Part shown: piece by piece, positions 32,404 to 60,419 of the stretch | Numbering within the stretch: the first letter of the stretch is position 1 | Layout: the number at the start of each line of letters is the position of its first letter | Source: Mytilus californianus | Taxonomy: Eukaryota | Length of the DNA: 64,000 nucleotides | Assembly: GCF_021869535.1 (NCBI RefSeq) | Contig: NW_026262668.1 | Location: 77,748,001 to 77,812,000, forward strand | Reading direction: 5' to 3' | The notes under the pieces: generated by a model | What the model was told of the DNA's origin: nothing | The model's input: the letters and a program-made list of their open reading frames with translations, nothing else | The model's database searches: none | Position numbers and translations under genes: made by a program

Positions 32404-33384
32404 TCCTGAAAGAAAAGAAAAATGTGTTAATGAATTAAAGGACATGTTCAAGGTAACGTTCTGTTTATCGATATCCCAGTCCGTTGATCTACGTTTGTAT
32501 GAAGTTTCATAGGAGAAAATCCGTTGATTGATTAGTCTACTGGTCCATAGAGAGTAATTTGTAAAAAGTTGATACAAGGTTTGTAGAATTCTCAATTTCT
32601 AAATTTCTCAGTAACATGGTTCATCATTACGAAAAGAATATCGATGAATTCAAGTGTTACGTGTTTGTTATCTCTGAATTGAAATGAATGGCGACAAGAG
32701 ACTCCTTCATATCTGCATTACAGTCCTTTCGACAATAAAAAAAAAAATTGAAGAGAAAAGAAAAAAAATGAAATGTGCACCAAAATATGACAATAGTACT
32801 GAAAAAAACCTAACGAAGTTGATGCATGATAAATGTTTCCTGTGCAAAGAATGCAAAATGCAATATATTTTCATAAAATTACAATTAAGATCCGTTGATG
32901 AATAATATACATCTAACTCACGGTTCGTTGACAATTTGTAATTATCAAACGTTCGAGAATTTAATACACCTATCTTTTTCTTTCATTTTTAAAGTGATTA
33001 AGTCGGTCTATATCATGAAAAACACATACAGACATAACTGCAAGGAAGTCTGTTAGTTTGACTTGGGTTTCCAAGTAAATTGTCAATCTCTAATTCCTTT
33101 ATGAAGCAGTTAATGTAAATTAAATAAATAAATGTAATTAACTTGGACTGAATCCATTGGTATTTTGACAAGTCTTGTTTCCAATTTATGGATTTAGGCT
33201 CACGGTATATTTTTGGTCATTTGGTTAACATTGCACTTTTGTTAAAAACGTTCAGTTAAACTGATTTTAAATTTCAATGAAATTTTTGCCAATAATTGCG
33301 TAAGATCTTATTTAAGTTTGGATTGAAAGCACAAATGGATTCATGATTCTTTTGTCCACTCGTTTCTCCCTTTTTCACCTCGTG

Positions 33385-33596: not shown

Positions 33597-34112
33597 CTGA
33601 AAAAGATTTTGGTGTTTGTCATTAGTAACAGTTAGATGTACTGCCCTAAGCGTCTGTGTGTCGATGTAGAGAGCATCGGGTTATAACACGCGCTTCATAT
33701 GTAACACAGAGTCCACGTATTTTGAGTCCGGATCCCACCTATGGAGCTCGAAGTCCTATAAAGGGAGCCTTATGGTTGGAGCCAGAAGCCCAACTTGGCA
33801 CACTGCTTAAAAGAGCCCGGGTCCATACTGTGGAGCCCGGAGCCAATAAAATATGAAACAGGAGCCAACGCAGACCCCGTGTTATCCCCTAAATAGCCAT
33901 TTGAATGAAAGTTTGTAAAAATAAAGGTCAAAATGTAGCCGTTTGTATTTTTATGAAATAAATACAATTAGAATAACAAATCATAGGGAATGACTTCCAT
34001 TTGAACACCCCTGTTTTAAACAGTAAGCAAAATATACAGGTAAAAAATGGGGGTGGGGGTCATAGTCCAGTCTAGCTACTAAGTGTAAACGAATCGAATC
34101 CGAAATACTTAC

Positions 34113-34374
34113 CAAATAAGTTTAAAACTGAAACCAAAACAAGGTGATTGGAATTTCCAAGTTAGATAACCCCTGTTGTAATTAGATTAACCTTTAATGT
34201 GTCTTATTTAATGCAAACAAAAATGCATACAGTTTTTTTTATTTTATTCGAATTTAATTCAAAAATACCATCTTTACAAATGGACATTATGAAAACATAT
34301 TATTTCTTTTTTTCGAATCAATGATGTCATATTTCTATATTTGATATTTATTTTTACTTCCTTCTACTTAAAAG
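34113..34374. promoter_or_regulatory. Putative compact bidirectional promoter / non-coding first exons of RING genes 1 and 2
   Basis: Minus-strand donor ttg|gtaagt at 34113/34112; plus-strand donor aag|gtatgg at 34374/34375. Between them: AAAACTGAAACC (34124, IRF/ISRE-like), GGAATTTCC (34150, kB-like), AGATAA (34164, GATA), TGATGTCA (34322), ACTTCC (34356, ETS-like). The block is conserved upstream of gene 3. Confidence 0.6.
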
Positions 34375-34838
34375 GTATGGTTTCAACGACAGTAGTACAG
34401 TAAAACTTTCACGAAACTTTTTACTAAAAATCAGATTTTTTTTCACTGTTTGTCGCTCGTGAAAAGATCTTATTTTAATCAGATTGGTCATGTATAAAGT
34501 AGCCTAGTCACTGAGCTTGAAACAAGAATAGCCTTAGAAACATGATTATTTACTATGATTAGCTGGCTTTGAACTAGATTTCAGTACTTGTGAGTAATCT
34601 GTGTCTTCAATATTATTTTTAGTTGTTTTTGTGCTTTGTGTCTGTCCCAAGTCAGAAGCCTGTAACTCAGTGGTTGTCGTTGTTTTTTGTATATCATATT
34701 TTTTTTGCCTATTGTTTTTAACAAAAAATAGGCCGTTGGTTTTCTCGATTGAATTATATTTTTTCATTTCAAGGTCTGTTATCTTTTTGCCCTTATCCTT
34801 TATACAGTATGGGTTTTAATCATTGTTGATGACCTTTA

Positions 34839-37215: not shown

Positions 37216-38625
37216 ATGAGTGACGAAAATGTATGTTCAGTGTGCTATGATACATTCAAATTTCCCAAAATGCTACCATGCAAACATTCATTTTGTATAT
37301 CATGTCTTCACGAATTTTTGGGAGGTTTACAAGATCAGTCAAACTTAATATGTCCGTTATGCAGGGAACCTTGTTATGTACCAGAAAAGGGATTTACCGA
37401 CTTCCCAACTAATAACTTTGTTCCAGTCGAGAAACCACCCAAAGTGTGTCAAGAATGCCATAAACTACCCGTGTACCAAAATTGTTTTTTATGCAGTACA
37501 GTTCTGTGCAAAAAATGTAATCGAATGCATTCGCATACTAAACATGCAACCGAACGAATACGCGGTGACGACAGTGACGACGAAAACATCGTCAGTCTTC
37601 CTCCACATTTACATTGGCATCTTATGCATCAAAATATGAAGACTGAGTTTTTATGCAAACAAAATTCTATGTTTGTCGGCGAGTTTCTTCCTATTGAAGA
37701 AATCAGAAAAACTGTCCGATCTATGGCATTTTCAAGAAATGGTGGCGTTTTTGTCAGACTGGATAAGAACGAATTTCTCTTAAAGTACGACAAACATGGG
37801 AAAATAATGGACAGAATTCCGTTGCCAGCAGAAGCATCAACTGTACTGGAAATAAAGAATGGATGTATTTTGCTCGCACATATAGGGGCTAAGGTTGTTG
37901 GTTGTTACAATCCACCCAAATTTCAAGTCTTTGCAAGAACGCCAACTTTTCATCCGATTGGTTTAGCGGAACTTCAAAATGAAAACATTGCGGTCAGTGG
38001 ACCAACACATCTATGCAATGCAGAGTGTAAAGATGGTGACTGTGAGTTGTCAAATAGTAGTCCTGGTGTTCTGCACATTTATACAACACAAGGAAAGCTA
38101 CTGCAAGAAATATCCAAAGACGCAATGGAGTATATCTTTAAGTGCCCGACTCAAATGGCTTCCAGTTATAAGGCTGGAACCATTGCTGTATGTGACACTA
38201 AATTTCATAAAGTTATAGTACTGGATTACGACGGAAAAGTGAGAGGATTGTATAAAGGCTGGAGAAAATTGCCGTTCTCTCTATTTACGGACGGAGAACC
38301 ATTCCTTCCTCTCTCCGTTTGCACAACTGCAGACGGAAATTTTATCGTGGCTGATATTTATAAAGAATGTTTACATGTCCTTAGTCCGCTTGGAAAATTT
38401 ATAGGCATTATGCGCGGTGAGGAAGGTGACTCTTTAATAGAGAGCAGTGCTTTATGTGTCGATTCCGAACAAAACATTTGGGTTGGTCACCATTCCCAAG
38501 GAACAATTACAGTTCTTAAGCCTAGTCGTCTGAATAATATTTTTGATCAGAGGCACTTTCCCTTCCTTCATGGTGAAGAACTCCGATTACCATTGTTTCC
38601 TGAACTTAATCTTGACGGGAACTAG
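37216..38625 (+). CDS. RING-HC / B-box-like / NHL-like beta-propeller protein, gene 2, 469 aa
   Basis: Single-exon ORF after the acceptor tttcgttgtag| (37201). RING CSVC...CKHSFCISC...CPLC; B-box-like CQEC-CFLC-CKKC-HSH; repeats HPIGLAEL, IAVCD, FIVAD, ALCVDSEQNIWVG. Confidence 0.93.
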   Translation: MSDENVCSVCYDTFKFPKMLPCKHSFCISCLHEFLGGLQDQSNLICPLCREPCYVPEKGFTDFPTNNFVPVEKPPKVCQECHKLPVYQNCFLCSTVLCKKCNRMHSHTKHATERIRGDDSDDENIVSLPPHLHWHLMHQNMKTEFLCKQNSMFVGEFLPIEEIRKTVRSMAFSRNGGVFVRLDKNEFLLKYDKHGKIMDRIPLPAEASTVLEIKNGCILLAHIGAKVVGCYNPPKFQVFARTPTFHPIGLAELQNENIAVSGPTHLCNAECKDGDCELSNSSPGVLHIYTTQGKLLQEISKDAMEYIFKCPTQMASSYKAGTIAVCDTKFHKVIVLDYDGKVRGLYKGWRKLPFSLFTDGEPFLPLSVCTTADGNFIVADIYKECLHVLSPLGKFIGIMRGEEGDSLIESSALCVDSEQNIWVGHHSQGTITVLKPSRLNNIFDQRHFPFLHGEELRLPLFPELNLDGN

Positions 38626-43275: not shown

Positions 43276-44210
43276 TACATATCGTGTATCTATGTGTAAG
43301 AGAATATTTCACCGGCAACATGATTCTATCTAGTCTTGAGCAAATAAACTCGATTTATCATCGGAGTTCTCTCTTTATACTTTAAAATATGTGATATCAA
43401 ACTAACAAGTTTAACATGTTCTATATATATATATTTGGCGTGTACCGTTTAACATTTGATGCTGACAGACGATGCATTCAAATATACCGGGGTAGTTTGC
43501 TAAACAACCAGTGGAAAATATTTCAGCATATTTAGAAGTTCAGACCCTGTTATTAGTTGTGATTACATATTTATTTACATCAGATCAGGAGAAATTGACT
43601 TTCCTACCGAACTTCCTACGAACTTCCAGAAAAGTCTCGTATTTTTAGGTTTTAGTTGTAATATTGCTGACGGATCACCACTGATGCCAGGGGCTCCCGA
43701 GTGGTACAATGGTCATTTTGAAAGAAATGTTATATATTTGCATTAGTCCTACCTAGCTCTGATTCAGAAAATGGTCAAGATTAAAATCTCAAAACATGAT
43801 CATACTCTGATCTCGGACAATAAAATGATATGGGTTAGATTTAAAAGACTGATGTTAATAATTTGATCCTTTCTTCAAAATTTAACCTAAATAACGCGGC
43901 ACTAACAAATACATTTTGTAATTAACAAATACCGAAAAAAAAGATTTACACAAAGGCACTTGTCTCTGAACAAAATTTACCTATATACCTGTATATATCG
44001 GTATTTTGTTTTCAGAGACAAGTGCCTGCGAAAACAAGTTAGGGTAGGGGATGCAGTATGCTTTGAAATAGCCTGGGACCCTGGCTCGATCACTGCATGC
44101 TCGGCGGTTCGTTAATATGATATTTGAATGATGCATCGTGGTATATATATAGCGTCATTTCTTGACACATGGCGAAGTATAAGATTGGGTCAGGATGACA
44201 GGCTAGTTTT

Positions 44211-44221
44211 GAAACTGAAAC
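44211..44221. promoter_or_regulatory. Canonical ISRE/IRF-like site, displaced half of the gene 3 promoter module
   Basis: GAAACTGAAAC immediately left of the TIR element; context agtttt-gaaactgaaac parallels agttta-aaactgaaac at 34119. Confidence 0.55.
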
Positions 44222-45092
44222 TAGGGGCGTGTTTTATTGGTCTCTTCTGCACATCTCCAGAATGTCTTCTGGTGAAGAGTCCAAAAAAAATGAATCTGGA
44301 CCTCTTCTGGAGATATTCTACTGAAGATCAATAAAACAAAAATTCAATTTGCCGTCGAATATAGCAGATTTTTGTTATGTTGGATGACATAAATGAAGTT
44401 TACGATGATTTTATAGAAAATTAAAATACGTCCGGTAGACATGACTGTAAAAGTGTGCTCTGTTCGTGACATTTTTCTTTGTTCTTTCCTCTAACTCAAT
44501 TTTGCTAGACAAATCTGGCTTAAACCCCCACTATTTGATTTTTAAGAATAATCTTAAACTGCACAAAAATTCGTCAATGTTTTTCTCGAATATGATCAAA
44601 AAGGACATCTTGTCTATCCAATTTTTTTAAAGTAACCAAACTGGATTATTTTTGTATAAAGCAAAGATATCGGAAAGTTCTCGAAATCATTTTTCTCTGG
44701 TGGTCCTTGAAGAAAATCTTCTGGTCCTAACTATTATTTCTATTGCAAAATTTCGATGGTCAAAATCTTCGGACCACCACTTTTCAAAAAAATTCATTGT
44801 ATATGTATCAATATGCAAGTATATATACAATGTATACCAGACATTTCTCAGACTGTTTTTTTTTTCTTTTTCTTTTTAATAAATCCGTTGGTTGTGTACT
44901 GATTGATACTTCAGTCTGGGAGAACAAGATTTATTTCAACATAAGTTGTTATTAGCTTTGAACAAACTTCCAGTAATTGCAAATACTCTTATTTCGGTGC
45001 TTTGTGTCTATTGTCTTAATGTAAGATTTTTATTTTATTTTTTTTTTTTGTGTCTCGTACCGATCTTTTGAGTTAATCTAATTGCAATTGAT

Positions 45093-45845
45093 TTGTGCAG
45101 GTTGTTCTTATATTGTACTGTTACACCACTGTCCCAGCTTCGGGAAGGGTTGAGCGCTCACAAACATGTTCTTGTACTGTTACAGCACTGTCCCAGGTTA
45201 GGGGGCGGGTTGGGCCGGATCTCGCTAACATGTTTAACCCCGCCACATTCTGTATGTATGTGCCTGTCCCAAGTCAGGAGCCTGTAATTTAATGGTTGTC
45301 GTTTGTTGCTGTGTTACATATTTGTTTTTCGTTCATTTTTTTGTACATTAATCAGACCATTAGTTTTCTCGTTTGAATTGTTTTACATTTGTGATTGCGG
45401 GGCCTTTTATATCTGACTATGCGGTATGGGCTTTGCTTATTGTTGAAGGCCGTACGGTGACCTATAGATGTTTATTGCTTTGTCATTTGGTCTCTTGTCT
45501 CATTGGCAATCTTCGTTTTTATATCAACCCTGCCATATTCTTTGTGTGCCTATCCCAAGTCAGGAGCCTATAGTTTAGTGGTTGTCGTTGGTTCATGCCT
45601 CGACTCATATTTGATATTTTGTAAATTATTTTGTTATGTATAATTAGGCCGTTAGTTTTTTCGTTTGAATTGTTTCTCACACTTTTCATGTCGGGCCTTT
45701 TATAGACGACTTTTAATACAGTATCGGGTTTTGTCATTGTTGAAGGCCTTAATTACGGTTGCCTATAATTTCTTACATCCACTTCATAATTGAACTCCGG
45801 TGGATAGTTGCCTCATAAGCAATCATACATCTCTTCGTTTTTATA
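45093..45845. repeat. Inverted, partly tandem-duplicated copy of the same interspersed repeat
   Basis: Reverse complement of 41349-41937 motifs; cccaagtcaggagcct occurs twice. Confidence 0.75.
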
Positions 45846-46569
45846 TTATATACTTGACTTTTAAACTCGTGTTTTCCTGAACCGAGTCCTGAACAGGCAT
45901 GACATATTTGTCACTGGGCGTTAAAAATTAGCAACAAACAATCAATCAATTTAAACTTGTGTTAAATAAGAAGAAAAACCATTTGATATTTATTCATTTA
46001 TTGGGGTGGGGGGCAGGTGGATTTCATATATGAATATGGTTGCCTGGTAAGAGCTGAAAAATAGTCATAATTAGCGACAGATTAAAAAGTTAATAATGCC
46101 CTATTCCCTTCCCCATCCTTCATCTATAAATTTAAACTGACCATAGCCCAACTTAGTGTTGAATGTAGCGTTTAACACCAATCAATCAAAATCCCTTCCC
46201 TAGAATATCAAATAGTCGTCCCTGAACTGTTATTGTCCGTGTAGTTCTTATATTTATCCAGCTTATCGTCCTACAGGGATGTCCTACTAAGACTGTCATA
46301 CCATAAGAACGTTTCTCTAATTCTTCGTCAATTATCCCTTTCTGCACCCATTGTATAAAAAAAATTTAATCAACGTGTGGTTCGTTTGATCTCAGTTCTT
46401 CATTGGTTAAAATCCGATTATGACGTCGAATTTTCTTGCTTTCCTCTGAATTTCCTATTGTGACGGCATGAAAAAAGGCGACCATGCCTGATGACGTCAC
46501 ATAGAAAGAACACATCTTTTTGCAGATCATTCGAAAAGAAGGAATAAATTTGCCTGCGTATTGTTTGAA

Positions 46570-46748
46570 AATCATTAGAGAAACAGATTCCACCACCAAA
46601 TCTCGTGTAATACGATATTTATCCACTCTCGACAGTTAAATTTTAAATATTTAAAACGCTCGGCGAGCCTCGCGTTTTAAATTTGAAAATTTAACTGTCT
46701 CGAGTGGATAAATATCGTATCACACTCGATGCAGTGGTAGAATCTATA
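46570..46748. repeat. Palindromic element end nested in the Harbinger-like element
   Basis: agattccaccac...acgatatttatccactc.cgacagttaaattt / reverse complement ...gtggtagaatct. Confidence 0.6.
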
Positions 46749-46904
46749 TTTATAACACAGCTCACATTCTAATATATCTGCATTCATAAATTTATTAATG
46801 TCATTTAGACTAAACGACGCCATGTTTGTTATGTGCCTCTGCCGTCTAAACTACCTAACAAAAAAGAAGAGGTGGAAGAGAGCCAGAAGATATTCCCTAT
46901 TCAA

Positions 46905-49572
46905 AATAAAATGCTTCGCTGGGCGCAGCTTGATACGACCGCAGAGGTCGAACCCTGAACAGTTGGGGCAAGTATGGACACAACATTCAAGCTTGATACA
47001 GCTCTGAATTTGGATTGTGATTAAATATTTGACACAGCATAGGTTTCTGACACAGAAAGAATGTGGTCTAAGAACTTCAATTTTTTTAATTTACCTATTA
47101 TGGTCCAATGTCCAAAATCAAAATACATGGTTAGATTCAGCATATCAAAGAACCCCATATATTCAATTTTTGTTGAAATCAAACAAAGTTTAATTTTGGA
47201 CCCCAACTTGGACAAACTTGAAAACTGGTCCCATAATCAAAAATCTAAACACATGTTTAGATTCAGCATATCAAAGTACCCGAAGAATTCAATTTTTGTT
47301 AAAATCAAACTAAGTTTAATTTTGGACCCTTTGGACCTTAATGTAGACCAATTTAAAAAACAGGACCCAAAATTAAAAATCTAAATACATGGTAAGATTC
47401 AGCATATCAAAGAACCCCATATATTCAATTTTTGTTGAAATCAAACAAAGTTTAATTTTGGACCCCAATTTGGACCAACTTGAAAACTGGGCCAAAAATC
47501 TAAAATCTAAATACATGTTTAGATTCAGCATATCAAAGAACCCCATATATTCAATTTTTGTTGAAATCAAACAAAGTTTAATTTTGGACCCCAACTTGGA
47601 CCAACTTGAAAACTGGTCCCATAATTAAAAATCTAAACACATGTTTAGATTCAGCATATCAAAGAACCCCAAAAATTCAATTTTTGTTAAAATCAAACTA
47701 AGTTTAATTTTGGACCCTTTGGACCTTAATGTAGACCAATTTAAAAAACAGGACCCAAAATTAAAAATCTAAATACACAGTTAGATTTGGCATATCAAAG
47801 AACCCCAATAATTCAATTTTTTATGAAATCAAACAAAGTTTAATTTTGGACCCTTTTGACCTCAATATGAACCAATTTGATAGCAGGCCCACAAATAAAA
47901 AATCTAAATACATGGTAAGATTCAGCATATCAAAGAACCCCATATATTCAATTTTTGTTGAAATCAAACAAAGTTTAATTTTGGACCCCAATTTGGACCA
48001 ACTTGAAAACTGGGCCAAAAATCTAAAATCTAAATACATGTTTAGATTTTGCATATCAAATAACCCCATATATTCAATTTTTGTTGAAATCAAACAAAGT
48101 TTAATTTTGGACCCCAACTTGGACCAACTTGAAAACTGGGCCCATAATCAAAAATCTAAACACATGTTTAGATTCAGCATATCAAAGAACCCCAAGAATT
48201 CAATTTTTGTTAAAATCAAATTAAGTTTAATTTTGGACCCTTTGGACCTTAATGTAGACCAATTTAAAAAACGGGACCCCAAATTAAAAATCTAAATATA
48301 CGGTTAGATTCGGCATATCAAAGAACCCCAATAATTCAATTTTTGATGAAATCAAACAAAGTTAAATTTTGGACCCTTTGGACCTCAATGTGGACCAATT
48401 TAAAAACGGGGCCCAAAATCCAAAAACTTAATACACGGTTAGATTCAGCATATTAAAGAACCCCAAGAATTCAAGAATAAAACCCCATTGAAATTGATCA
48501 AGAAATAAGCAATTTATACGAAGTATCTTCTTTTGCACAACACTGTGCAATTGAATATTTCTTGCTATTGCGCAATACTGTACAATTGACAATTTCTTGC
48601 TATTGCGCAATATTGTGCTATTGGATATTTCTTGCTATTGCGCAATACTGTGCAATTGAAGATTTCTTGCTATTGCGCAATACTGTGCAATTGAAGATTT
48701 CTTGCTATTGTGCAATACTGTGCAATTGAAAATTTCTTGCTATTGCACAATACTTATTATATAATAATTTACACATCCTGTTTGGTGTGTATCTCCTACC
48801 ATATCATTATTATTTGCTTTTAAATATAAATCAGAAATAATCAACTTAAAATGGAAAATTTTAAAAGAAAAAAAAAAGGAAAAAAAGAAAAAAAAAAAAA
48901 AAAAAAATCTCCCCCCCCCAAATTTTTTGAACCCCCTTATGATTCATCACCCCCAAACTCAATCCCAGCCTTCCCTTTGTGGTATGGTACCTTGCAGTAC
49001 AATTTCAGAGAGATCCATACACTTGAACACAAGTTATTGTCTGGAAACTAGAAAAATGCTTATTTTTGGCCCCTTTTTGGCCCCCAATTCCTAAACGTTT
49101 CGGGCAATTACCCCCAAACTCAATTCCAGCTTTCCCTTTGTGATATGGAACCTTGTAGTACAATTTCAGAAATATCCAAACACTTACACACAAGTTATTG
49201 TCATGAAACTAGAAAAATGCTTGTTTTTTGCCCCTTTTTTGGCCCCTAATTCCTAAAATTTTGAGGCAATTACCCCCAAAATCAATTACAGCCTTCCCTT
49301 TGTGATATGGAACCTTGTGGTACAATGTCAGAGAGATCTATACACTTACACACAAGTTATTGTCTGAAAATTACAAAAATGCTTATTTTTGGCCCCTAAT
49401 TCCTTAACTGTTGGTACCATAACCCCCAAAATCAATCCCAACCTTCCTTTCGTGGTATTGAACCTTATGGTGAAATTTCATGGAGATCCATTCACTTAAA
49501 CTAAAGTTAGAGTGCGAAAACCAATGTGTCTTCGGACGACGCCAGACGACGCCGGACGACGACGACGACGAC

Positions 49573-49603
<31 letters not shown>

Positions 49604-49660
49604 CCAACGTCATACCAATATACGACCAAAAAATTTTTAATTTTTGCGGTCGTATAAAAA
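46905..49660 (-). mobile_element. HINE family A copy, expanded (2.75 kb), with several internal arrays
   Basis: Reverse complement of family A termini; (GAC)n at 49536-49605; arrays of 126/136-bp and 35-bp units. Confidence 0.88.
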
Positions 49661-49713
49661 CAGAAGTGGACCTCTTCTGGCTCACTACCGAAGAACAAAA
49701 AAACACGCCCTAG

Positions 49714-49975
49714 AATTACAGTGGAAATTTCCAAGTTAGATAATCCCGTCATAATTTGATAACCTCATGCTTTATATTTATACAGATATATCGTAAACTT
49801 GTTTCTTTCGAATATAATTAACAAATATTAAAACTACGAATTTATATTATGATAACCTATACAAGGTATCTTTTTAAAACTATGATATCAATGATGTTAT
49901 AGTATCAATTATATTATAGTATGTGTCACAATTCTATATTTAGAACTGAATGTTACTTCCTCCTAACAGGATAAG
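49714..49975 (+). promoter_or_regulatory. Putative promoter / non-coding exon 1 of RING gene 3
   Basis: GGAAATTTCCaagttAGATAA (49723), atcaatgatgt (49887), ttctatattt (49932), ttacttcct (49952) and donor aag|gtatgg (49976) occur in the same order as in 34150-34380. Confidence 0.6.
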
Positions 49976-50895
49976 GTATGGAATAGTTTCATTTCTATAT
50001 TACCTCCGTATTAACAATCTTTTAGTGTCAAATGAAATCTTCTATCAGCAGAATTGTGCTTAATATTATGCATGCTGCCTACCACCGTGATACGTATAGT
50101 AAAACCATGTGGTAGTTATGCAGTTGCTTCGTTTACTTTAAATTTGGGCTTGTCATGCTGTAGTTTACTTTTCGTCCCATAAGATTAATTTATTTCTAGT
50201 TGCATATATTTCATGCATGTTGACGAGAACAACTTAACAATAAATCAAAAATGAAGGTTCTGCAAAGTGGGCGGCGTCGACCGATATATGAATTATGTCC
50301 GAAAATTTCGACTGCCCCTAGAAAATACGGGTATTGTTGTAGAGGCAGACATTTTGTTATCACTGCAGGTCACAAAGAGTTGTAGCAAGAGTGATCAAGA
50401 GTTCTTTAACATGCAGAGAGCGTGGCACTTTCCCTACAGAAATCATCGGATTTTATCACACCTTTTCCGATCGTTGGACGTGGCTGAGTAGTTTTGAGGG
50501 TGTGGATGGGGGTTTACAGAATAGAGATTAATGAGGTGCTAAAATATAAAGAATAGAGAAAACTGGGCGAAAAGTATAACAGAATAGAGAAAAATTACCT
50601 AAAAAATTAAAGAATACAGAAATGAAGGACCCTCATACATACCTCATTTATACATCCTGCACAGCCAAACGGACGCACTTATTTACTGCCAGTTGTGAGA
50701 TTCCTCGTCTACTTTCGGGGTTGCTTGCAGTTAGAAAAGGGCTGCAGCTTTTGTAATACCATACAGTCCTTATGAATGTTCATAGGAGTTTTGTCTCTTA
50801 GGCAGGATGCCTTCAGCCTATGCCAACATTCGAAAAATATATAGTCAACATATGCCTATACCAACAAAATGCACTAGGCGTTGTTATAGCAATTT

Positions 50896-52597
50896 AAACT
50901 AGAGGCTCTAAAGAGCCTGTGTCGCTCACCTTGGTCTGTGTGCTGCAGTGCATATTAAACAAAGGACACTACAACATTAAAGACAAGAATAGAATTCATG
51001 ACAAAATTCTCTGTTTTGGTGATGGTGACTTGTTTGTAGATCTTACTTAACTGAACATTCTTGCTGTTTACAGTTATCTCTATCTATAATGAAATTGGCC
51101 CAGTAGTTTCAGAAGAAAAGATTTTTGTAAAAGATAAAAAAATTTACGAAAAATTGTGAAAAATTGACTTTAAAAGGCAATAACTCCTGAAGGGGTCAAT
51201 TGACAATTTTGGTCATGTTGACTTATTTGTAGATCTTACTTTGCTTAACAGTCTTGCTGTTTACAGTTATCTCTATCTATAATGAACATGGCCCAGTAGT
51301 TTCAAAAGAAAAGATTTTTGTAAAAGATAAAAAAAATTACGAAAAATTGTGAAAAAATGACTTTAAAAGGCAATAACTCCTGAAGGGGTCAATTGACAAT
51401 TTTGGTCATGTTGACTTATTTGTAGATCTTACTTTGCTTAACAGTCTTGCTGTTTACAGTTATCTCTATCTATAATGAACTTGGCCCAGTAGTTTCAGAA
51501 GAAAAGATTTTTGTAAAAGATAAAAAAAATTACGAAAAATTGTAAAAAAATGACTTTTAAAGGCAATAACTCCTGAAGGGTCACTTGACAATTTTGGTTG
51601 ACTTATTTGTAGATCTTACTTTGCTGAACATTTTTGCTGTTTACAGTTTATCTCTATCTATTATAATATTCAAGATAATAACCAAAAACTGCGAAAATTT
51701 CCTTAAAATTACCAATTCAGAGGCAGCAACCCAACAACGGGTTGTCTGATGCGTCTGAAAAGTTTGCAGCAGATAGATCTTGACCTGATGAACATATTTA
51801 CCCCATGTCAGATTTGCTCTAAATGCTTCAGTTTCAGAGATATAAGCCAAAAACTGCATTTTACCCCCATGTTCTATTTTTAGCCACGGCGGCCGTCTTG
51901 GTTGATGGACGGGGTCATCGGATATACTTTTTAAACTAGATACCCTAAGGATGATTTAGGTCAAGTTTGGTTTAATTTGGCCGGGTAGTTTCAGAGGAGA
52001 AGATTTTTGTAAAAGATAACAAAAATTTACGAAAATTGAGAGAGAAAAAATGACTTTAAAGGGCAATAACTCTTTATGGGGTCAAATGACAATTTTGGTC
52101 ATGTTGGCTTATTTGTAGATCTTACTTTGCTGAACAATTTTGCTGTTTACAGTTTTCTCTATAATATTCAAGATAATAACCAAAAACTGCAAAATTTCCT
52201 TAAAATTACCAATTCAGAGGCAGCAACCCAACAACAGGTTGTCTGATGCGTCTGTAAATTTTAGGGCCGATAGATCTTAACCTGATGAACATTTTCCCCT
52301 CTCAGATTTGCTCTAAATGCTTTAGTTTCAGAGATATAAGCCAAAAACTGAATTTTACCCCCATGTTCTATTTTTATCCACGGCGGCCATCTTGGTTGAT
52401 GGGCGGGGTCATCGGATATATTTTTTAAACTAGATACCCTAAGGATGATTTAGTTCAAGTTTGGTTTCATTTGGCCCAGTAGTTTCAGAGGAGAAGATTT
52501 TTGTAAAAGTTAACGGACGACGACGACGACGACGGACGACGGACGCAAAGTGATGAGAAAAGCTCACTTGGCACTTTTGGGCCAGGTGAGCTAAAAA
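50896..52597 (-). mobile_element. HINE/Helentron-type element (TTTTAGCTCACCTG family) in intron 1 of RING gene 3
   Basis: Minus-strand 5' end tttttagctcacctggccc...gtgagc, (GTCC/GTC)n, ~190-bp internal tandem repeats, 3' end gagcgacacaggctc...ctagttt. Confidence 0.85.
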
Positions 52598-54074
52598 TTA
52601 TTTGAAAAAAAATAAACCACCAAAATCATTGTCCAATAGCTTAATTTGTAATCTTGGGGTAGAAAATTTGAATTAAAACAAAATTAAGATAGAAAGAATT
52701 GCAGTTTATATATAATGGGAAAAAACTATTTTAGAAACATGTGTCATTAGGTAGGAATACCAATATCTTGTAATTTTATCAATGGAAACATTAACAAAGG
52801 AAACATGCCCTTATATTTATAAACACATATTTGTATGTCAAGATGTGTGTGTCTAGTGTTGTAGACGTGTCATAATGAATCAATGTAAACATATAAGCTT
52901 TGTTATGACTGGTAAGGACAGTTATTTAGTTACTGTTAGTTTTTTCATTAAGACCGACCGAAGGTGTCTCAAAGTTTGCATGTGTAAAACAACCAGTAAT
53001 TCCAAGCGTTGATAAAAAGGTCTAATGTTGGTGAGACTAGGTAGTGTCCGGCTGACATATATGCATCATCGTGTTTGACATGCATAACTGGCAGAATTAA
53101 GTCTACAAGTGCATCACCCCAAGTCTTTGGTGGGGTTCGTGTTGCTCAGTCGTTAGTTTTCTATTTTGTGTTTTGAGCTTTAAAGAACTACCATTCTCAT
53201 TAATTGCTTTCATCACATGTCATACGATTCTCGAATTACATTGCTAAAAAATTCATATGGAGAGATGATTATTCCTATTGAAAGAAAAAAAAACCTTTTC
53301 CTGCTTCTTTAATGCGAATAAAAAAGAGATCAGCTACACCAGAGAAATATAATACTATATTTTTTAAAACTCAATGTTGAATTGCTTTTTTCCCCTAATT
53401 TTAAATGGAAACATACTATTTCTTTCACTTCCTTCTAAAACATTTTCTCAAGAAATTTAGAATCAAACAACTTATTTAAAAAAAAACATACCCACAACAA
53501 AAAATGAATGGTCATTGATTTGTGCGATAATTTCACATGGATATATACCAATTAATTATTTTTTGTCTCATTTTAGGCAATATTGTGGTTCAGCAAAGTC
53601 CTAATTTGTTAGTCACCGAATGGTAGAATTTTGTTTAGACTTCAATATTGAGGATAAATATGTAAATTTAATTCGTTCAATAACAAATGTAACATTCACC
53701 ACCACAGTCTTTATTTCTTCGCTGAAGTCCTTTAGGTAACTGTTAAGCTTAATGTTTGCTTTACGCCAACCTAGCAAACAATGCTAACTAAGATAAAGAA
53801 CGACACAAAGGTGATATTACTTTTATAGAATAATTTCTCTATATTTTATGGGATTTTCATCTCAAGAGCAGTAACCACATGCTTTTCTTATCGCGATTTC
53901 TTCTTTTTTTCTAAAAATTTGACACAACCCAAGCTGTATTTGTCTTGATTTTACACGATCTTATAATTTTCCATACAAATTAATGACACACATTATGTTA
54001 AGATCCAATTTTGATTTTACATAATATATTTTACCAGTAAAATTTTGTTTAATTTCGTTACAGGTTGTGGCAAA

Positions 54075-55484
54075 ATGAGTGACGAAAATGTATGCTCTGT
54101 CTGCTGGGATAATTTTAAATTTCCAAAAATGTTACCATGTAAACATTCATTCTGCATTTCATGTCTTCACGAGTTTCTAGGAGGCCTAACAGACAAGTCA
54201 AACTTAATATGTCCGTTATGCAGGGAGCCTTGTTATGTACCAGACAAAGGATTTACAGACTTCCCAACAAATTACTTTGTTCCAGTCGAGAAAACTCCAA
54301 AACTATGCCAGGAATGCCAAAAATTACCCGTTTACAAGAATTGTTACCTATGTAGCACAATTATTTGCAAACAATGTGATCGTCTTCATTCACATGGTAA
54401 AAAGTCAGACAAGCAAGGTGATGACGACACTGAAAATGGTAGTATCGCTTCCCTTCCTCCTCATTTACATTGGGCTCTCATGCATCAAAATATGAAGACA
54501 GAACTTTTATGTCAACAAATTTCTATGTTTGTTGGAGAGTTTCTTCCCATTGATGATATACGGAAATCCGTTCGTTCTATTGCCGTATCGAGAACTGGGG
54601 GTGCTTATGTAAGATTAAACGAAAATGAATTTCTTCTAAAATACGATAAGCATGGAAAGATAGTCAACAGAATTCCTTTACATGCAGATGCAGCCACAGT
54701 GCTTGAGACGATGGATGGATCACTGTTAATTTCACATTTTGCACTGAAAGCAGTCGTTTGCTATGGAAACGGTTCACCTGACTCAAAACATTTCTATTTT
54801 GTGAAGACACCAACTTTTCATCCAATTGGTATGACTGAATTGCAGAATAGGAATATTGCAGTGAGTGGACCAACACATCTTTGTACCGCCAAGTGTAAAA
54901 ATAATGATTGCGAATTATCCAAGACTAGTCCTGGTGTCCTACACATTTACACTAGACAAGGCACGTTAGTGAAAGAAATTAAACAAGATATAATGGAACC
55001 TATCTTTAATTTTCCAACTGAAATTGCATCTAATAATAGAACCGAAACAATAGCTGTGTGTGACACTCACCTAAACAAAGTAATCATTATAGATTACGAT
55101 GGGAAAGTTCGAGGATTTTTTAAAGGTTGGAAGTTACCGTTTACATTATTTTCAGAAAATTTCCATCCTTCGTCCGTGTGTTCAACTGCCGATGGATATT
55201 TCCTTGTAGCCGATCCTCACAAAGAATGTTTACACATACTCAATCCGTATGGCAAATTTATAGGTATTGTGCGTGGTGAAGATGGTGATAGTTTAGCGGA
55301 TAGCAGTGCTGTATGCGTTGATGCTGAAAACAATATCTGGGTGGGACATCACAGTCAAGGAACCATTACCGTGTTGAAACCAAGCTGTTTTAAGAACAAA
55401 TTTGACCAATTGCGCTTTCCTTTTCTCAATGGTGAAGATCTTCGATTACCGTTCTTCCCCGGACTTCATCTCGATCCGAACTAA
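54075..55484 (+). CDS. RING-HC / B-box-like / NHL-like beta-propeller protein, gene 3 (paralog of gene 2), 469 aa
   Basis: Starts MSDENVC after the acceptor tttcgttacag| (54063). Same length as gene 2 and clearly homologous (6 differences in the first 73 aa). AATAAA at 55540. Confidence 0.93.
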   Translation: MSDENVCSVCWDNFKFPKMLPCKHSFCISCLHEFLGGLTDKSNLICPLCREPCYVPDKGFTDFPTNYFVPVEKTPKLCQECQKLPVYKNCYLCSTIICKQCDRLHSHGKKSDKQGDDDTENGSIASLPPHLHWALMHQNMKTELLCQQISMFVGEFLPIDDIRKSVRSIAVSRTGGAYVRLNENEFLLKYDKHGKIVNRIPLHADAATVLETMDGSLLISHFALKAVVCYGNGSPDSKHFYFVKTPTFHPIGMTELQNRNIAVSGPTHLCTAKCKNNDCELSKTSPGVLHIYTRQGTLVKEIKQDIMEPIFNFPTEIASNNRTETIAVCDTHLNKVIIIDYDGKVRGFFKGWKLPFTLFSENFHPSSVCSTADGYFLVADPHKECLHILNPYGKFIGIVRGEDGDSLADSSAVCVDAENNIWVGHHSQGTITVLKPSCFKNKFDQLRFPFLNGEDLRLPFFPGLHLDPN

Positions 55485-55659: not shown

Positions 55660-58330
55660 TATCCAGACGGGATGTTCTGTTGTTGTTTAAATCAGACGGG
55701 ATGTGCTGTTGTTGTTCAAATTAGACCGGATGTGCTGTTGTTGAAGTGAGGTCTGAACAAGTAGTGTTGTCTTCATGTATCGTGTCATATTGTATATTAG
55801 CCACCAGTATTGTTATAGCGAGATGGGATGCACTGTTACTGTAGCCATTTTTAATGTACTGTTGTTGAAATCAGGTTAAATGTCCCGTCTTTTTCAATGT
55901 CTGGTTTATCGTTGATGTAGTCAGGTCTGATTTACCTCACTGCTGTTATAGTCAGGTCAATTGTTGAAGAAATGAGTGATTTGTCGCATTGTTGTAGTCA
56001 TATTATAAGATTTACTTCACTGTTGTTGAGGTAATGATTGATTAACAACACTGTTGTTATAGTCGGGTTAGATTTACAGTTAATGTAAGCAGGTCTGACT
56101 TACCGTTGTAGTAGTCAGGTCATATTTACTGTCAGTGTAGTCTAGTCTGATATACCACACTGTTGTTATAATCAGGTCTGATGTACCGTTGTATAGTCCG
56201 GTCTGAATTACCGCACTATTGTTCTATTCGGGTCTGATTTACCGCGCTGTGGTTGTAGTTGGGTCTGATTAACCGCACAATTGTTGTAATCATGTCTGAA
56301 TTACCACACTGTTGTTATAGTCACGTCTGATGTACCGTTGTTATAGTCAGGTCTAATGTACCGTTGTTGTAGTCCAGTCTGAATTACCTCACTGTTGTTG
56401 TAGTCCGGTCTGATTTACCGTACTGCTGTTTTTGTCGGGTCTAATTTACCGCACTATTGTTATAGTCGGGTATAATTTACCACACTTTTGTTATAATCAG
56501 GTCTGATTTACCGTACTGCTGTTGTTGTCGGGTCTAGTTTGCCGAATATTGTTATAGTCCTGTATAATTAACCACACTTTTGTTGTAGCCAGGTCTGATT
56601 TACCGTACCGTTGTTGTAGTCCGGTTTGATTTACCGTACTGTTGTTATAGTCCGGTCTGATTTACCATACTGCTGTTGTAGTCAGGTCTGATATCCCGCG
56701 TTGTTGTTTTAGTCAGGGTTGAGTTACTGCACTGTTTTTATAGTCATTTCTGATTTACCATTGTTGCAGTCCGGTGTGATTTACTATACTACTGTTGTAG
56801 TCAGGTCTGATATCCCGCCTTGTTGTTTTAGTCAGGATTTAATTACTGCACTACTGTTATAGTCATTTCTGATTTACCATTGTTGTTGTCCGGTCTCATT
56901 TACCGTACTGCTGTTAAATTCAGGTTCGACTTACCGATCTGGTGTTGTCGTCCGGTCATATTAATCGTACTGCTGTTGTAGTAAGGTATGATTTACCGTA
57001 CTTGTGTTGTAGTCCGGTCTGATTTACCATAGTGGTATTGTAGTCCTTTTTGATTTACTGTAGTGGTGTTGTAGTACGTTTGATTTAACCGTAGTGGTGT
57101 TGTAGTCCGGTTTATTTACCGTACTGGTGTTGTAGTCATGCAGTTCTGATTTATCATGTTGGTGTTGTAGTCCGGCCAAATTTACCGTACTGTTATTTTA
57201 ATCAGGTCTGATTTACCGTACTGATGTTATAGTCCGGTCTGATTTATCGTACTGATGTTATAGTCCGGTCTGATTTATCGTACTGGTGTTGAAGTGAAGT
57301 CTGATTTGTCGTAGTGGTGTTGTAGTCCGGTCAGATTTACCGTACTGCTGTTGTAGTCATGTCTGATTTTCCTAGTTGTTGTTTAAGTCAGATTTGAATT
57401 ACCGCACTATTGTTAAAGTCATGTCTGATTTACCATTGTTTTAGTCCGGTCGGATTTACCGCACTATTGTTGTAGTCGGATCTGATTTACCACACTGTTG
57501 TTGTAGTCGAGTATGTTGTACCGTTGTTGTAGTCAGGTCTGCTTAACAACACTGTTGTTAAAGGCAGGTCGGATTTACTATTGTTGTAGTCAGGTATGCT
57601 TTACCCCGCTGTTGAAGTTGGGTCAGATGTATCGTTGTTGTAGTAAGGTTTGATTTACCACACTGTTGTTGTAGAAAAGTCTGATATACCGCACTGTTGT
57701 TGTTAGGTCTGATGTACCAATGTTGTAGTCGGATCTGATTTACCACACTGATGATGTAGACGATTCTGATTTACCGCACTGTTGTTGTAGTCGGATTTTA
57801 TTTACCACGCTGTTGTTCACGGTAGTCGAGTCTGATTAACTGCACTGTTGTTGTAGTCGGGTCTGATGTACTGCACTGTTGTTGTATTTGGGTCTGATTT
57901 ACCACACTGTTGTTATAGTAGGGTATAATTTACAGCATTATTGTTATAATTAGGTATGATTTACCACACTGTTGTTACAGTCGGATCTGATTTACCGCTC
58001 TATGTTTATAGTGAGCTCTGATGTACCGTCGTTGTAGTCATGTTTGAATTTCCGCACTGTTGTTTATAGGTAGGTCTGAATTACTGCACTGTCTAATTTA
58101 TTGCATTATTATTGTAATCAGGTCTGATTAACCGTTGTTGTAGTCAAGTCTGATTTACCTCACAGTTGTTGCAGTCAGGTCTTAACACGACACTGATGAT
58201 TATAGTCAGGTTTGAATTACAATTGTTGTAGTCATATCTGATTTACCTGGCTGTTGTTGAAGTCAGGTCTGATTTATTAGTTATATTCAGGTTTGAAGTA
58301 TGATGATGGGAGTTTTTAACGACCTTGACT
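55660..58330. repeat. Degenerate ~25-32-bp GT-rich minisatellite
   Basis: gttgtagtc(a/c)ggtctgatttaccg(c/t)actgtt units. Confidence 0.9.
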
Positions 58331-58478
58331 GGCTATACAGCCCTCGAACGATCGGTTTGAAGTAGTGCTGTAGTCAGGTCTTATAAATTGATGTAGGGAG
58401 TGAAGTGTTGATGTAGTCAGGTGTGATATTCTGATGTAGTCCAGCCTTATGTTTTGTTGTAGAGTCTGATATAGTTTT

Positions 58479-59610
58479 GTTGTAGTTAGATTGTTTGTCT
58501 TGTTGTAATCAAGTCTAATGGATTGTTGTAGGCAGTATGATTAAGTTTCGTTGTAGTTTAGTTTTTTTTGTCTTGTTGTAATCAAGTCTAATGGATTGTT
58601 GTATGCAGTATGATTAAGTTTCGTTGTAGTTAGATTTTTTGTCCTGCTGTAATCAAGTCTAATGGATTGTTGTATGCAGTATGATTAAGTTTCGTTGTAG
58701 TTAGATTTTTTGTCTTGTTGTAATCAAGTCTTATGGATTGTTGGAGGCAGTATGCTCCAGTTTCGTTGTAGTTAGAATGTTTGTCTTGTTGTAATCAAGT
58801 CTTATGGATTGTTGTAGGCAGTATGATTAAGTTTCGTTGTAGTAAGATTGTTTGTCTTGTTGTAATCAAGTCTAATGGATTGTTGTAGGCAGTATGATTA
58901 AGTTTCGTTGTAGTTAGATTTTTTGTCTTGTTGTAATCAAGTCTAATGGATTGTTGTATGCAGTATGATTAAGTTTCGTTGTAGTTAGATTTTTTGTCTT
59001 GTTGTAATCAAGTCTTATGGATTGTTGGAGGCAGTATGATTCAGATTCGTTGTAGTTAAATTGTTTGTCTTGTTGTAGTCAAGTCTTATTGATTGTTGGA
59101 GGCAGTATGATTCAGTTTCGTTGTAGTTAGATTGTTTGTCTTGTTGTAATCAAGTCTTATGGATTGTTGTAGGCAGTATGATTAAGTTTCGTTGTAGTTA
59201 GATTGTTTGTCTTGTTGTAATCAAGTCTAATGGATTGTTGTAGGCAGTATATTAAGTTTCGTTGTAGTTAGGTTTTTTTTGTCTTGTTGTAATCAAATCT
59301 AAAAGATTGTTGTATGCAGTATGATTAAGTTTCGTTGTAGTTAAATGTTTTGTCTTGTTGTAATCAAGTCTAATGGATTGTTGTGGGCAGTCTGGTAAAG
59401 TTTCGTTGTAATTAGATTTTTTGTCTTGTTGTAGGCAGTATGATTAAGTTTCGTTGTAGTTAGATTTTTAGTCTTGTTGTAATCTAGTCTAATGGATTGT
59501 TGTAGACAGTCTGATATAGTTTTTTTGTAGTCAGATTTTATATCTTGTTGTAGTCCATCCAAATGCATTGTTGTAGGCAGTATGATTAAGTTTCGTTGTA
59601 GTCAGATTTG
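58479..59610. repeat. 71-bp tandem repeat, ~16 copies, built from three gttgta-initiated subunits
   Basis: gttgtagttagattttttgtctt / gttgtaatcaagtctaatggatt / gttgtaggcagtatgattaagtttc. Confidence 0.9.
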
Positions 59611-60419
59611 ATGTCCTAATGTAGTCCAGGCAAATGAATTGTATGGGTTTTCCTCATAGCTGAAGAGGGTATTACGGTGCCCTGAAGCTGCTTACATCCA
59701 CGTCCTTTGGTCTTTCTCGGATAGCTGTCTCAATGGCAACCACACCACATCTTCTTATGCTTATATTATTGACTGGGTCATCGGGCATAATGTTTAATGG
59801 ACCAATCCTTACGGGTCATGTAGGCAAGTTTAGTTATTATTAACCTAGTTGTTTCAGGCGGTAAGATGTTTTTGACGGACGCTTCACTACAGACGAGAAA
59901 CGATGGACGCCAAGTGGTGGAAAAACTCACACTGGCCCTTTGGACTAAGTATGAGCTATTGATATCAAAATGTAGACCATGTCTACACTATACATTATAT
60001 TTCAGTTAAATGTTTGATTAAAATGTATAAAGCGTAATGTTGCATAATGATTACATTGTTTTATTTATATTTTATCAGTCTATATATATATCACTGTATT
60101 GATTTATCACTTTATTGATTTACAAATGAAATACACATTTTTTTTAAGTAGATCTCTTTGACATAACTTATATTTGATAATCAATAAGCTTTTATCTTCC
60201 GTTGTTGATTTTGTGTTTCGAGATATATCGATTAGCTTAATTGGATATAATTAATGTACCAAATAAAAAGATTATAATATTTTTCTCAGGCTTCAAACGA
60301 TATACGACAGGTACAAATTTGTAAATTATTTAAAAGAATGGTTATTTATATAGTAAAGCGTGTAAATCGGCTTTAGAAGTGTTAAATTGCTCTGTGTAAA
60401 ACAGTAATCAGTATCGAAT

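What the first reader, a model, noticed from the sequence alone, without database searches (positions are those of the whole stretch)
44205..49745. A 5.5-kb transposon has split a paralog's ISRE from its NF-kB/GATA sites; the empty site rebuilds the intact module
Seen: removing 44225-49710 and one TAG copy gives agttttGAAACTGAAAC-tagaattacagt-GGAAATTTCCaagttAGATAAtccc. This parallels the intact module upstream of gene 2: agtttaAAACTGAAAC-caaaacaaggtgatt-GGAATTTCCaagttAGATAAcccc (34119-34173). Four more blocks downstream are conserved in the same order, ending at the exon-1 donor. Known: closely spaced IRF and Rel sites cooperate in innate-immune enhancers, and bivalves have IRF and Rel factors. 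Inference: the insertion removed the IRF input from gene 3 while leaving kB/GATA, so the two ~469-aa paralogs may now respond to different stimuli. This would be transposon-driven regulatory subfunctionalisation.
Basis: partly seen in the sequence, partly recalled or inferred. Interest (0 to 1): 0.82.

Follow-up and report, generated by a model that had tools for sequence, protein, structure and literature searches.

The report
Transposon splits conserved mussel immune-type promoter
A young mobile DNA element has landed inside a short promoter that five mussel species keep upstream of a RING-finger gene, parting a candidate interferon-factor site from a candidate NF-kB site, but it seems not to be fixed in the species and no effect on expression has been shown.

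Summary
Window 44225-49710 is a transposon with terminal inverted repeats and a TAG target duplication. Removing it rebuilds a GAAACTGAAAC / kB-like / AGATAA module like the one upstream of gene 2.

Decisive evidence: the orthologous gene-3 promoter is uninterrupted in M. coruscus, M. galloprovincialis, M. edulis and M. trossulus. M. coruscus reads exactly as the predicted rejoin, with a single TAG.

Spliced M. coruscus RNA contigs confirm the exon-1 donor. They place the start of transcription about 30 nt after a conserved TATA-like box, so the module lies at roughly -190 to -240.

The 5.5-kb insert is composite. It is a ~2.3-kb non-autonomous PIF/Harbinger-like element (3-bp target duplications, about 350 genomic copies) carrying two nested repeats of 434 bp and 2.75 kb.

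Within the species (assembly statistics match M. californianus) the insertion looks polymorphic. One other individual shows the junction, and two show contigs that leave the transposon exactly at the empty-site position.

The functional reading is untested. Subfunctionalisation does not fit, because gene 2 keeps all motifs, the paralogs are far older than the insertion, and the allele seems unfixed. This is a well-documented example of a known kind and a usable natural experiment.

The parts
44211..44221 (+). IRF/ISRE-type element GAAACTGAAAC of gene 3. With the next T it reads GAAANNGAAACT. It now lies 5.5 kb from the rest of the promoter.
   Evidence: Conserved in the orthologs of four species, and as AAAACTGAAAC / AAAACCGAAAC in gene 2.
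44222..44224 (.). Left copy of the 3-bp target-site duplication, TAG.
   Evidence: M. coruscus has a single TAG here.
44225..49710 (+). Composite insert of 5,486 bp. The host is a non-autonomous PIF/Harbinger-like transposon with terminal inverted repeats (host parts 44225-46314, 46749-46904 and 49656-49710).
   Evidence: Inverted repeat. Copies of 2.2-2.6 kb elsewhere in the genome match these parts. 354 left ends in the genome against 0 in the control. No ORF of 150 aa or more.
46315..46748 (.). Nested 434-bp insert, absent from the other copies. It contains an 81-nt inverted repeat (46575-46655 / 46675-46755).
   Evidence: a joint at 46306-46749 appears.
46905..49655 (.). Nested 2.75-kb element that carries tandem repeats: 126-bp units x10, 35-bp x6.6, ~160-bp x2.8, a (GAC)n run and a terminal hairpin.
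   Evidence: The joint 46904->49656 (skips 2751) in all runs comes from canonical copies without it. The junction is unique to this locus, while the element itself has at least 947 candidate copies at 96-100% identity.
49711..49713 (.). Right copy of the target-site duplication, TAG.
49723..49732 (+). kB-like site GGAAATTTCC. The orthologs read GGGAATTTCC or GGGAATTCCC.
49738..49743 (+). GATA-type AGATAA, inside the block AAGTTAGATAA.
49935..49943 (+). Conserved TATA-like box TATATTTAG.
   Evidence: Invariant in all seven aligned sequences. It lies about 30 nt before the 5' ends of the RNA contigs in M. coruscus.
49965..49975 (+). Inferred non-coding exon 1 of gene 3, about 11 nt here because of a 14-nt deletion relative to the other species. 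The GT donor is at 49976-49977.
   Evidence: By homology to M. coruscus exon 1, which four RNA-derived contigs show spliced to exon 2. Not shown by RNA of this species.
54064..55484 (+). Exon 2 of gene 3. The acceptor AG is at 54062-54063 and the CDS is 54075-55484 (469 aa, RING / B-box / propeller-like).
   Evidence: dN/dS against M. coruscus is 0.26.
34124..34169 (+). Uninterrupted module of gene 2: AAAACTGAAAC (34124-34134), GGAATTTCC (34150-34158), AGATAA (34164-34169).
37216..38625 (+). CDS of gene 2 (469 aa).

Best explanation
Shown: a ~2.3-kb non-autonomous cut-and-paste DNA transposon of PIF/Harbinger type inserted at a TAG 12 bp upstream of the kB-like site. The site lies in the proximal promoter (about -225) of a TRIM-like RING/B-box/propeller gene. 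The same copy carries two nested repeats, which bring the insert to 5,486 bp. This happened in the lineage of this species (assembly statistics match Mytilus californianus) after its split from M. coruscus. The insertion moved a conserved IRF-type GAAACTGAAAC element 5.5 kb away from the conserved kB-like / GATA / TATA core.

Probable: the allele is still polymorphic in the species.

Inferred:
- Mobilisation was in trans, by one of the many Harbinger transposases in the genome.
- The module is a real cis-regulatory unit; I put the GAAACTGAAAC element being a working IRF site at about 55-60%.
- On haplotypes that carry the insert, gene 3 has probably lost proximal IRF-Rel cooperation while keeping its core promoter. 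Overall I put this at about 25-30%.

The most likely population-genetic status is a young, neutral or mildly deleterious promoter variant, not a resolved division of labour between the paralogs.
For: Inverted repeats and TAG duplication. 3-bp duplications of YWR type in 9 of 12 copies including this one. 354 left ends in the genome, first 200 bp 97-99% alike. This copy is 1.8% from the family majority, against dS 0.053 to M. coruscus.

Uninterrupted orthologous sites in M. coruscus, M. galloprovincialis, M. edulis and M. trossulus, with collinear flanks in M. coruscus (83% on the left, 88% on the right).

The module and five further blocks are conserved across two paralogs whose other non-coding DNA is unalignable. 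Exon 1, donor and approximate start of transcription come from four spliced M. coruscus RNA contigs.

Polymorphism: the X5 contig starts inside the transposon end at 49684. The X6 and X8 contigs carry nearly all the local depth (41.8 of 48.3; 43.1 of 45.2). They match only from 49710 on, with 26 and 271 unmatched letters upstream. Junction words are held by X5, X7 and X25-27 but not by X6 or X8.

The CDS is intact, with dN/dS 0.26. Oyster IRF2 and IRF8 activate canonical ISRE reporters (PMC5557890). More than 2,000 DDE_Tnp_4 candidates, many with open frames, are in the genome.
Against: No binding or expression data exist for any motif. The spacing between the IRF-type and kB-like sites varies from 8 to about 25 nt among species, which argues against a rigid enhanceosome.

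The empty allele in X6 and X8 is inferred from where contigs stop matching. The joint 44224->49714 itself was hidden among 2,024 unlisted joints. The junction-word search rested on only 2 words, and two runs of one sample disagreed (X7 holds them, X3 does not).

A site 5.5 kb away can still act by looping. No autonomous partner with the same inverted repeats was found. M. galloprovincialis and M. edulis RefSeq models begin their CDS upstream of the TATA-like box, so another start of transcription may exist.
Confidence: 0.8

Rival explanations
1. One reading: transposon-driven regulatory subfunctionalisation. The insertion removed IRF input from gene 3 while leaving kB/GATA input, so the two paralogs now respond to different stimuli.
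For: The IRF-type site is physically separated from the rest of a conserved module. Gene 2 keeps the contiguous module. The gene 3 CDS is intact and under purifying selection.
Against: There is no complementary loss, since gene 2 keeps all motifs. The paralogs share 70% amino-acid identity and both exist in M. trossulus, so the duplication is far older than the 1.8%-diverged insertion. The insertion is limited to one species and apparently not fixed. No expression data are available.
Confidence: 0.08
2. A functionally silent insertion. Either the conserved blocks are core-promoter or unrelated factor sites rather than IRF/Rel sites, or the displaced site still works at a distance. The insertion is then an ordinary neutral transposon polymorphism of a repeat-rich mussel genome.
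For: The family has hundreds of young copies. Motif spacing is flexible among species, and M. coruscus and the M. trossulus gene 2 have each lost the GATA core. The CDS remains constrained. The allele has reached several individuals.
Against: An exact ISRE consensus and a consensus kB site are kept across five species and two old paralogs, while the surrounding DNA is unalignable. Proximal sites in TATA promoters are usually sensitive to distance (general knowledge).
Confidence: 0.45
3. An assembly artefact: the 5.5-kb repeat block was misplaced into this promoter by the assembler.
For: The insert consists wholly of high-copy repeats.
Against: The ends are precise, with a perfect 3-bp duplication and inverted repeats. 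An independent short-read contig of another sample (X5) reads from the transposon end into the unique flank with no mismatches. Junction words occur in five runs from two studies.
Confidence: 0.02

Closest known systems
Non-autonomous PIF/Harbinger elements (Tourist-like)
   Same: Terminal inverted repeats beginning GGGC...GTTT, 3-bp target duplications at TWA/CWG-like (YWR) targets, no coding capacity, and hundreds of near-identical copies. Many DDE_Tnp_4 transposase genes are present in the same genome.
   Different: At 2.3 kb it is much longer than a typical MITE. The target here is TAG. No autonomous partner sharing the inverted repeats was identified. The resemblance of the repeats to PIF/Tourist comes from memory, not from a database match.
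Vertebrate composite IRF + NF-kB promoters (IFN-beta PRDI/PRDII; ISRE-plus-kB genes such as CXCL10)
   Same: A GAAANNGAAACT element lies 8-25 nt from a GGGAATTTCC-type site, within about 250 bp of a TATA box.
   Different: This is an invertebrate gene with no binding or induction data. The spacing is not fixed. A GATA-type site directly abuts the kB-like site.
Transposon insertions as cis-regulatory alleles (Accord at Drosophila Cyp6g1, Hopscotch at maize tb1)
   Same: A segregating transposon insertion in the regulatory DNA of a gene, recognisable by empty sites in relatives.
   Different: In those cases an expression and phenotypic effect is demonstrated. Here none is, and the expected effect is separation of existing sites, not donation of new ones.
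TRIM-NHL-type E3 ligases (TRIM2/3/71-like), expanded in bivalves
   Same: An N-terminal C3HC4 RING, a B-box-like zinc finger and a C-terminal NHL/SGL-like propeller signal. The genes sit in a local cluster of RING genes.
   Different: The B-box and NHL matches fall below Pfam cut-offs. A coiled coil was not tested. The protein is short, at 469 aa.

Membership tests
PIF/Harbinger DNA transposon (non-autonomous) | 3-bp target-site duplication | tested here: met
   TAG/TAG at this copy. 9 of the 12 copies examined have perfect 3-bp duplications: CTA, CTG x3, CAG x2, TAA, TTA and TAG.
PIF/Harbinger DNA transposon (non-autonomous) | Terminal inverted repeats | tested here: met
   11 of 11 nt exact, about 17 of 19 extended. 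The same ends occur in 11 other copies.
PIF/Harbinger DNA transposon (non-autonomous) | A DDE_Tnp_4 transposase (and Myb-like ORF) in an autonomous relative with the same ends | tested here: inconclusive
   The element has no ORF of 150 aa or more. The genome holds more than 2,000 DDE_Tnp_4 candidates, but the 10 loci fetched lack these repeats within 1.5-kb flanks.
ISRE / IRF-binding element | Sequence GAAANNGAAA(CT) | tested here: met
   GAAACTGAAACT at 44211-44222. Only 6 GAAANNGAAA matches occur in the 64-kb window.
ISRE / IRF-binding element | Binding by an IRF and stimulus-dependent activation | not testable with these tools
   Indirect only: oyster IRF2 and IRF8 activate mammalian ISRE reporters (PMC5557890).
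NF-kB/Rel site | GGGRNWYYCC | tested here: inconclusive
   The window's gene 3 matches 9 of 10 positions (GGAAATTTCC). [quoted passage not shown] Gene 2 has the 9-bp GGAATTTCC. Binding was not tested.
Subfunctionalisation of duplicates (DDC model) | Complementary loss of regulatory elements in both copies, fixed in the species | tested here: not met
   Gene 2 keeps all motifs. The insertion appears unfixed and is absent from four other species.
TRIM (RING / B-box / coiled-coil) with NHL propeller | RING, B-box and NHL repeats | tested here: inconclusive
   RING is above the cut-off. B-box gives E 0.005 in gene 2 only. NHL and SGL fall below their cut-offs. A coiled coil was not tested.

The most novel reading that the evidence does not exclude
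The conserved GAAACTGAAAC / GGGAATTTCC / AGATAA block is a native IRF + Rel + GATA promoter of a lophotrochozoan antiviral-type E3 ligase pair. The segregating insertion then gives a natural within-species pair of alleles, contiguous versus split. Allele-specific expression in heterozygous mussels could test directly whether proximal IRF-NF-kB cooperation, known from vertebrate interferon-type genes, already operates in molluscs.
Probability: 0.25. Interest if true: 0.6.

Novelty: new member of a known kind. Interest (0 to 1): 0.4.

Why it matters
Native invertebrate promoters with both an exact ISRE and a consensus kB site, conserved across species and paralogs, are rarely documented. Most evidence for bivalve IRF and Rel activity uses mammalian reporter constructs.

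If the module is functional, this locus offers a ready natural allele pair, with the module contiguous or split by 5.5 kb. That pair could be used to measure how much proximity of the two sites matters in a mollusc, inside single heterozygous animals.

Otherwise it is one more of the many young transposon insertion polymorphisms of mussel genomes. It should not be cited as subfunctionalisation.

Tried and rejected
- **Alternative haplotig:** searches with both flanks found only the locus itself plus short unrelated repeats.
- **Exact-protein look-ups:** the window's gene 3 protein and M. edulis isoform X2 were not on record. The orthologs of the other species were reached through cluster members instead.
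- **RNA of this species:** run X21 gave about zero depth on 49871-50050. This is uninformative, because exon 1 is only about 11 nt here and just 6% of the run was read. I draw no conclusion about expression.
- **The joint 44224->49714:** it was not among the listed joints, because reads from other copies of the repeats swamped the table.
- **Junction-word search:** the 60-nt query had only 2 sampled words, and two runs of the same sample disagreed. It counts only as weak support.
- **Target duplication length:** my first reading of 2 bp was an off-by-one error. Proper end mapping corrected it to 3 bp.
- **Rfam:** no match on 44000-50200.
- **Other loci with the module:** no third locus has the kB/GATA 17-mer exactly. 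A search with gene 2's 34100-34400 found only itself.
- **Autonomous partner:** none found among the top 10 DDE_Tnp_4 loci.
- **Logan contigs L061-L064:** these proved to be genomic DNA of M. galloprovincialis type. They do not reach the promoter.
Full report
**1. The observation**

At 44211-44235 it is GAAACTGAAAC, then TAG, then GGGCGTGTTTT. At 49700-49743 it is AAAACACGCCC, then TAG, then AATTACAGT, GGAAATTTCC and AAGTTAGATAA.

The 11-nt terminal inverted repeat occurs exactly at these two places in the window.

I joined 44224 to 49714 in a script and compared the result with the 4.6 kb upstream of gene 2.
- The best blastn hit spans the junction: 34121-34193 against 44208..49765, 77% over 74 nt, E 1e-6.
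- Two further collinear hits follow.
- Everything else in these non-coding stretches is unalignable.

The 17-mer ATTTCCAAGTTAGATAA occurs exactly only at these two promoters in the whole 1.65-Gb genome.

**2. The genes**

Gene 2 (37216-38625) and gene 3 (ATG at 54075, stop at 55484) each encode 469 aa and share 70% identity. Both have a C3HC4 RING above the Pfam cut-off. B-box and NHL/SGL propeller signals are weak. They are therefore TRIM-like E3 ligases. A third RING gene lies at 31018-32595 on the minus strand.

**3. The insert**

The first 200 bp of the insert have at least 530 candidate matches in the genome at 97-99% identity. The 31-nt left end occurs 354 times with up to two mismatches, against 0 for the reversed control.

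Eleven other copies were fetched.
- They are 2.2-2.6 kb long, or 3.4-3.5 kb with insertions of their own.
- They match insert positions 1-2090, 2525-2685 and the last 51 nt.

The window's copy is therefore a ~2.3-kb element with two nested additions.
- A 434-bp palindromic piece lies at about 46315-46748.
- A 2.75-kb repeat that carries tandem arrays lies at 46905-49655.
- The joint 46904->49656 seen in every run comes from canonical copies elsewhere.
- The nested junction itself is unique to this locus, while the nested element has at least 947 candidate copies at 96-100% identity.

Target duplications are 3 bp and perfect in 9 of 12 copies. All are of the form YWR: CTG, CAG, TAG, CTA, TAA, TTA.

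The element has no ORF of 150 aa or more and no Rfam match.

From established knowledge of DNA transposon superfamilies, 3-bp TWA/CWG-type duplications with GGGC...GTTT inverted repeats indicate PIF/Harbinger. The genome holds more than 2,000 DDE_Tnp_4 candidates, many with open frames. No partner with the same ends was found in ten loci.

**4. The decisive test: empty sites in relatives**

The word search found the gene 3 ortholog cluster in M. edulis, M. galloprovincialis, M. trossulus and M. coruscus. Their genomic loci were fetched with 10-kb flanks.

All four have the promoter uninterrupted.
- M. coruscus reads GTTTGAAACTGAAAC, TAG, AATTACAGT, GGGAATTTCC, AAGTTAGAC. This is the predicted rejoin with a single TAG. 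Its collinear flanks are 83% identical on the left and 88% on the right.
- M. galloprovincialis and M. edulis read GAAACTGAAAC, then 8-11 nt, then GGGAATTTCC and AAGTTAGATAA.
- M. trossulus has three GAAA units (GAAACTGAAAGTGAAAC) and GGGAATTCCC.

The window's CDS is 97.8% identical to M. coruscus at the nucleotide level, with dS 0.053 and dN/dS 0.26. The transposon copy differs from the family majority at 1.8% of sites. This fits an insertion after the split from M. coruscus.

The assembly has 175 contigs, 1.65 Gb and a largest scaffold of 142.4 Mb. These figures match the published M. californianus reference, which the paper describes as 176 scaffolds (PMC9710001). This identification is an inference.

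**5. Promoter anatomy**

Four RNA-derived Logan contigs of M. coruscus show exon 1 (ending ...ATAAG) spliced to exon 2, 10 nt before the ATG. The longest three (L059, L065, L066) have 5' ends at AACAGG or CAGG; L067 starts nearer the donor. L059 has adapter sequence directly in front.

These ends lie about 30 nt after TATATTTAG, which is invariant in all seven aligned sequences.

In window coordinates:

| Feature | Position |
|---|---|
| TATA-like box | 49935-49943 |
| Start of transcription (approximate) | about 49965 |
| Donor GT | 49976-49977 |
| kB-like site | 49723-49732 (about -240) |
| Transposon insertion point | about -255 |

The start and donor are placed by homology with M. coruscus, not by RNA of this species.

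Blocks conserved between the paralogs and among species:
- the IRF-type element;
- the kB-like plus GATA block;
- TTCGAAT.TAA;
- TTATGA.A;
- the TATA block;
- TTACTTCCT.CTA.

Caveats:
- The window's exon 1 carries a 14-nt deletion relative to the other species.
- RefSeq models of M. galloprovincialis and M. edulis start their CDS at an ATG 45 nt before the TATA-like box, so an upstream start may also exist.
- Gene 2's exon-1 donor is not verified. The M. trossulus ortholog has a longer annotated exon 1.

**6. Is the insertion fixed?**

Runs of the same organism label were found for the right flank, and three DNA runs plus one RNA run were laid on 44100-50050.

| Run | Contig depth / local depth | Where it matches | Reading |
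|---|---|---|---|
| X5 | 4.84 / 6.06 | its first letter lies on 49684, inside the transposon end; 0 mismatches into the flank | insertion allele |
| X6 | 41.8 / 48.3 | only from 49710 on, with 26 unmatched letters upstream | no transposon end |
| X8 | 43.1 / 45.2 | only from 49710 on, with 271 unmatched letters upstream | no transposon end |

Position 49710 is the C before TAG. An empty allele (...GAAAC TAG AATT...) would start to match exactly there, whereas a canonical transposon end would match from about 49660.

A 60-nt query made only of junction-spanning words was held by X5, X7 and X25-27 (two studies) and not by X6 or X8.

Weak points:
- The junction query had only 2 sampled words.
- X3 and X7, two runs of one sample, disagree.
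- The joint itself was hidden among 2,024 unlisted joints.

I put the probability that the insertion is polymorphic at about 75-80%.

**7. Function**

Nothing here measures binding or expression. Points in favour of a functional module:
- The exact ISRE consensus GAAANNGAAACT and a consensus kB site are kept in five species and, in variant form, in a paralog whose surrounding DNA has diverged beyond alignment.
- Only 6 GAAANNGAAA matches occur in the 64-kb window.
- Oyster IRF2 and IRF8 activate canonical ISRE reporters (PMC5557890).

Points against a strict enhanceosome:
- The spacing between the two sites ranges from 8 to about 25 nt.
- The GATA core is lost in M. coruscus and in the M. trossulus gene 2.

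The transposon supplies no replacement near the promoter. Its only GAAANNGAAA match is at 44863 on the minus strand, and it has no kB-type match.

My estimates:
- the element is a working IRF site: 55-60%;
- the insert allele has altered inducibility: 25-30% overall.

**8. Why it is not subfunctionalisation**

- Gene 2 keeps all motifs, so no complementary loss has occurred.
- The duplication predates the divergence of these species. Both paralogs stand side by side in M. trossulus.
- The insertion is young, confined to one species and probably unfixed.

The fitting description is a segregating promoter-insertion allele in one paralog.

**9. Verdict**

This is a new member of a known kind. Its interest is moderate, mainly as a natural experiment.

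Noticed in passing
window 46905-49655; also window 1000-2300 (reverse strand) and 10697-11073: A very abundant, very young repeat: at least 947 candidate copies at 96-100% identity. It carries internal tandem arrays (126-bp, 35-bp and ~160-bp units), a (GAC)n run and a terminal hairpin (TATACGACC...GGTCGTATA). RNA run X21 covers it heavily and almost only in one read direction (up to 2,884 against 55). These reads come from all genomic copies. From memory it resembles the tandem-repeat-bearing Helitron/Helentron-associated elements described in bivalves; this was not tested.
   Followed up: partly
window 46315-46748: A 434-bp insertion private to this transposon copy, built around an 81-nt inverted repeat (46575-46655 / 46675-46755, 79% complementary). 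It looks like a small palindromic MITE.
   Followed up: no
window 49965-49977 versus L058:1680-1706: Exon 1 of the window's gene 3 has a 14-nt deletion relative to the other four species (ATTTCACCACAAAA in M. coruscus; one base shorter in the other three), leaving an exon of about 11 nt. The kB-like site also has G>A at its third base. Contigs of X5, X6 and X8 show no differences at these positions, so both changes seem species-wide and not linked to the transposon.
   Followed up: partly
L057:8290-8400, L058:1440-1460: Lineage-specific changes in the module. M. trossulus has a third GAAA unit and about 13 extra nt between the IRF-type and kB-like sites. M. coruscus has a 3-nt insertion that destroys the GATA core (AGACATTAA). 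The M. trossulus gene 2 reads AGTTATATAA.
   Followed up: no
L060:10001-10078, L068:10001: RefSeq models of M. galloprovincialis and M. edulis extend the protein by 30 aa (MIFNVCHNSIF...) from an ATG 45 nt upstream of the TATA-like box. In the window the equivalent frame stops after four codons (ATG ATG TTA TAG). The extension is probably a model artefact or an upstream ORF. M. edulis isoform X2 uses a different first exon.
   Followed up: partly
window 44108-44180: The left flank just upstream of the IRF-type site is itself a short dispersed repeat. It has many genomic matches at about 80% identity. This inflated the depths in the first bin of the read table.
   Followed up: no
window 55847-59642 and 51014-52514: Large tandem-repeat arrays lie directly downstream of gene 3 (about 3.7 kb, units of roughly 70 bp and multiples) and inside its intron (about 190-500-bp units at 88-94% identity).
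   Followed up: no
G000 genome-wide (e.g. L074-L076): More than 2,000 candidate DDE_Tnp_4 (Harbinger-type) transposase matches, many with uninterrupted frames of 500-570 aa and identical scores at several loci. This suggests recently active autonomous PIF/Harbinger elements.
   Followed up: partly
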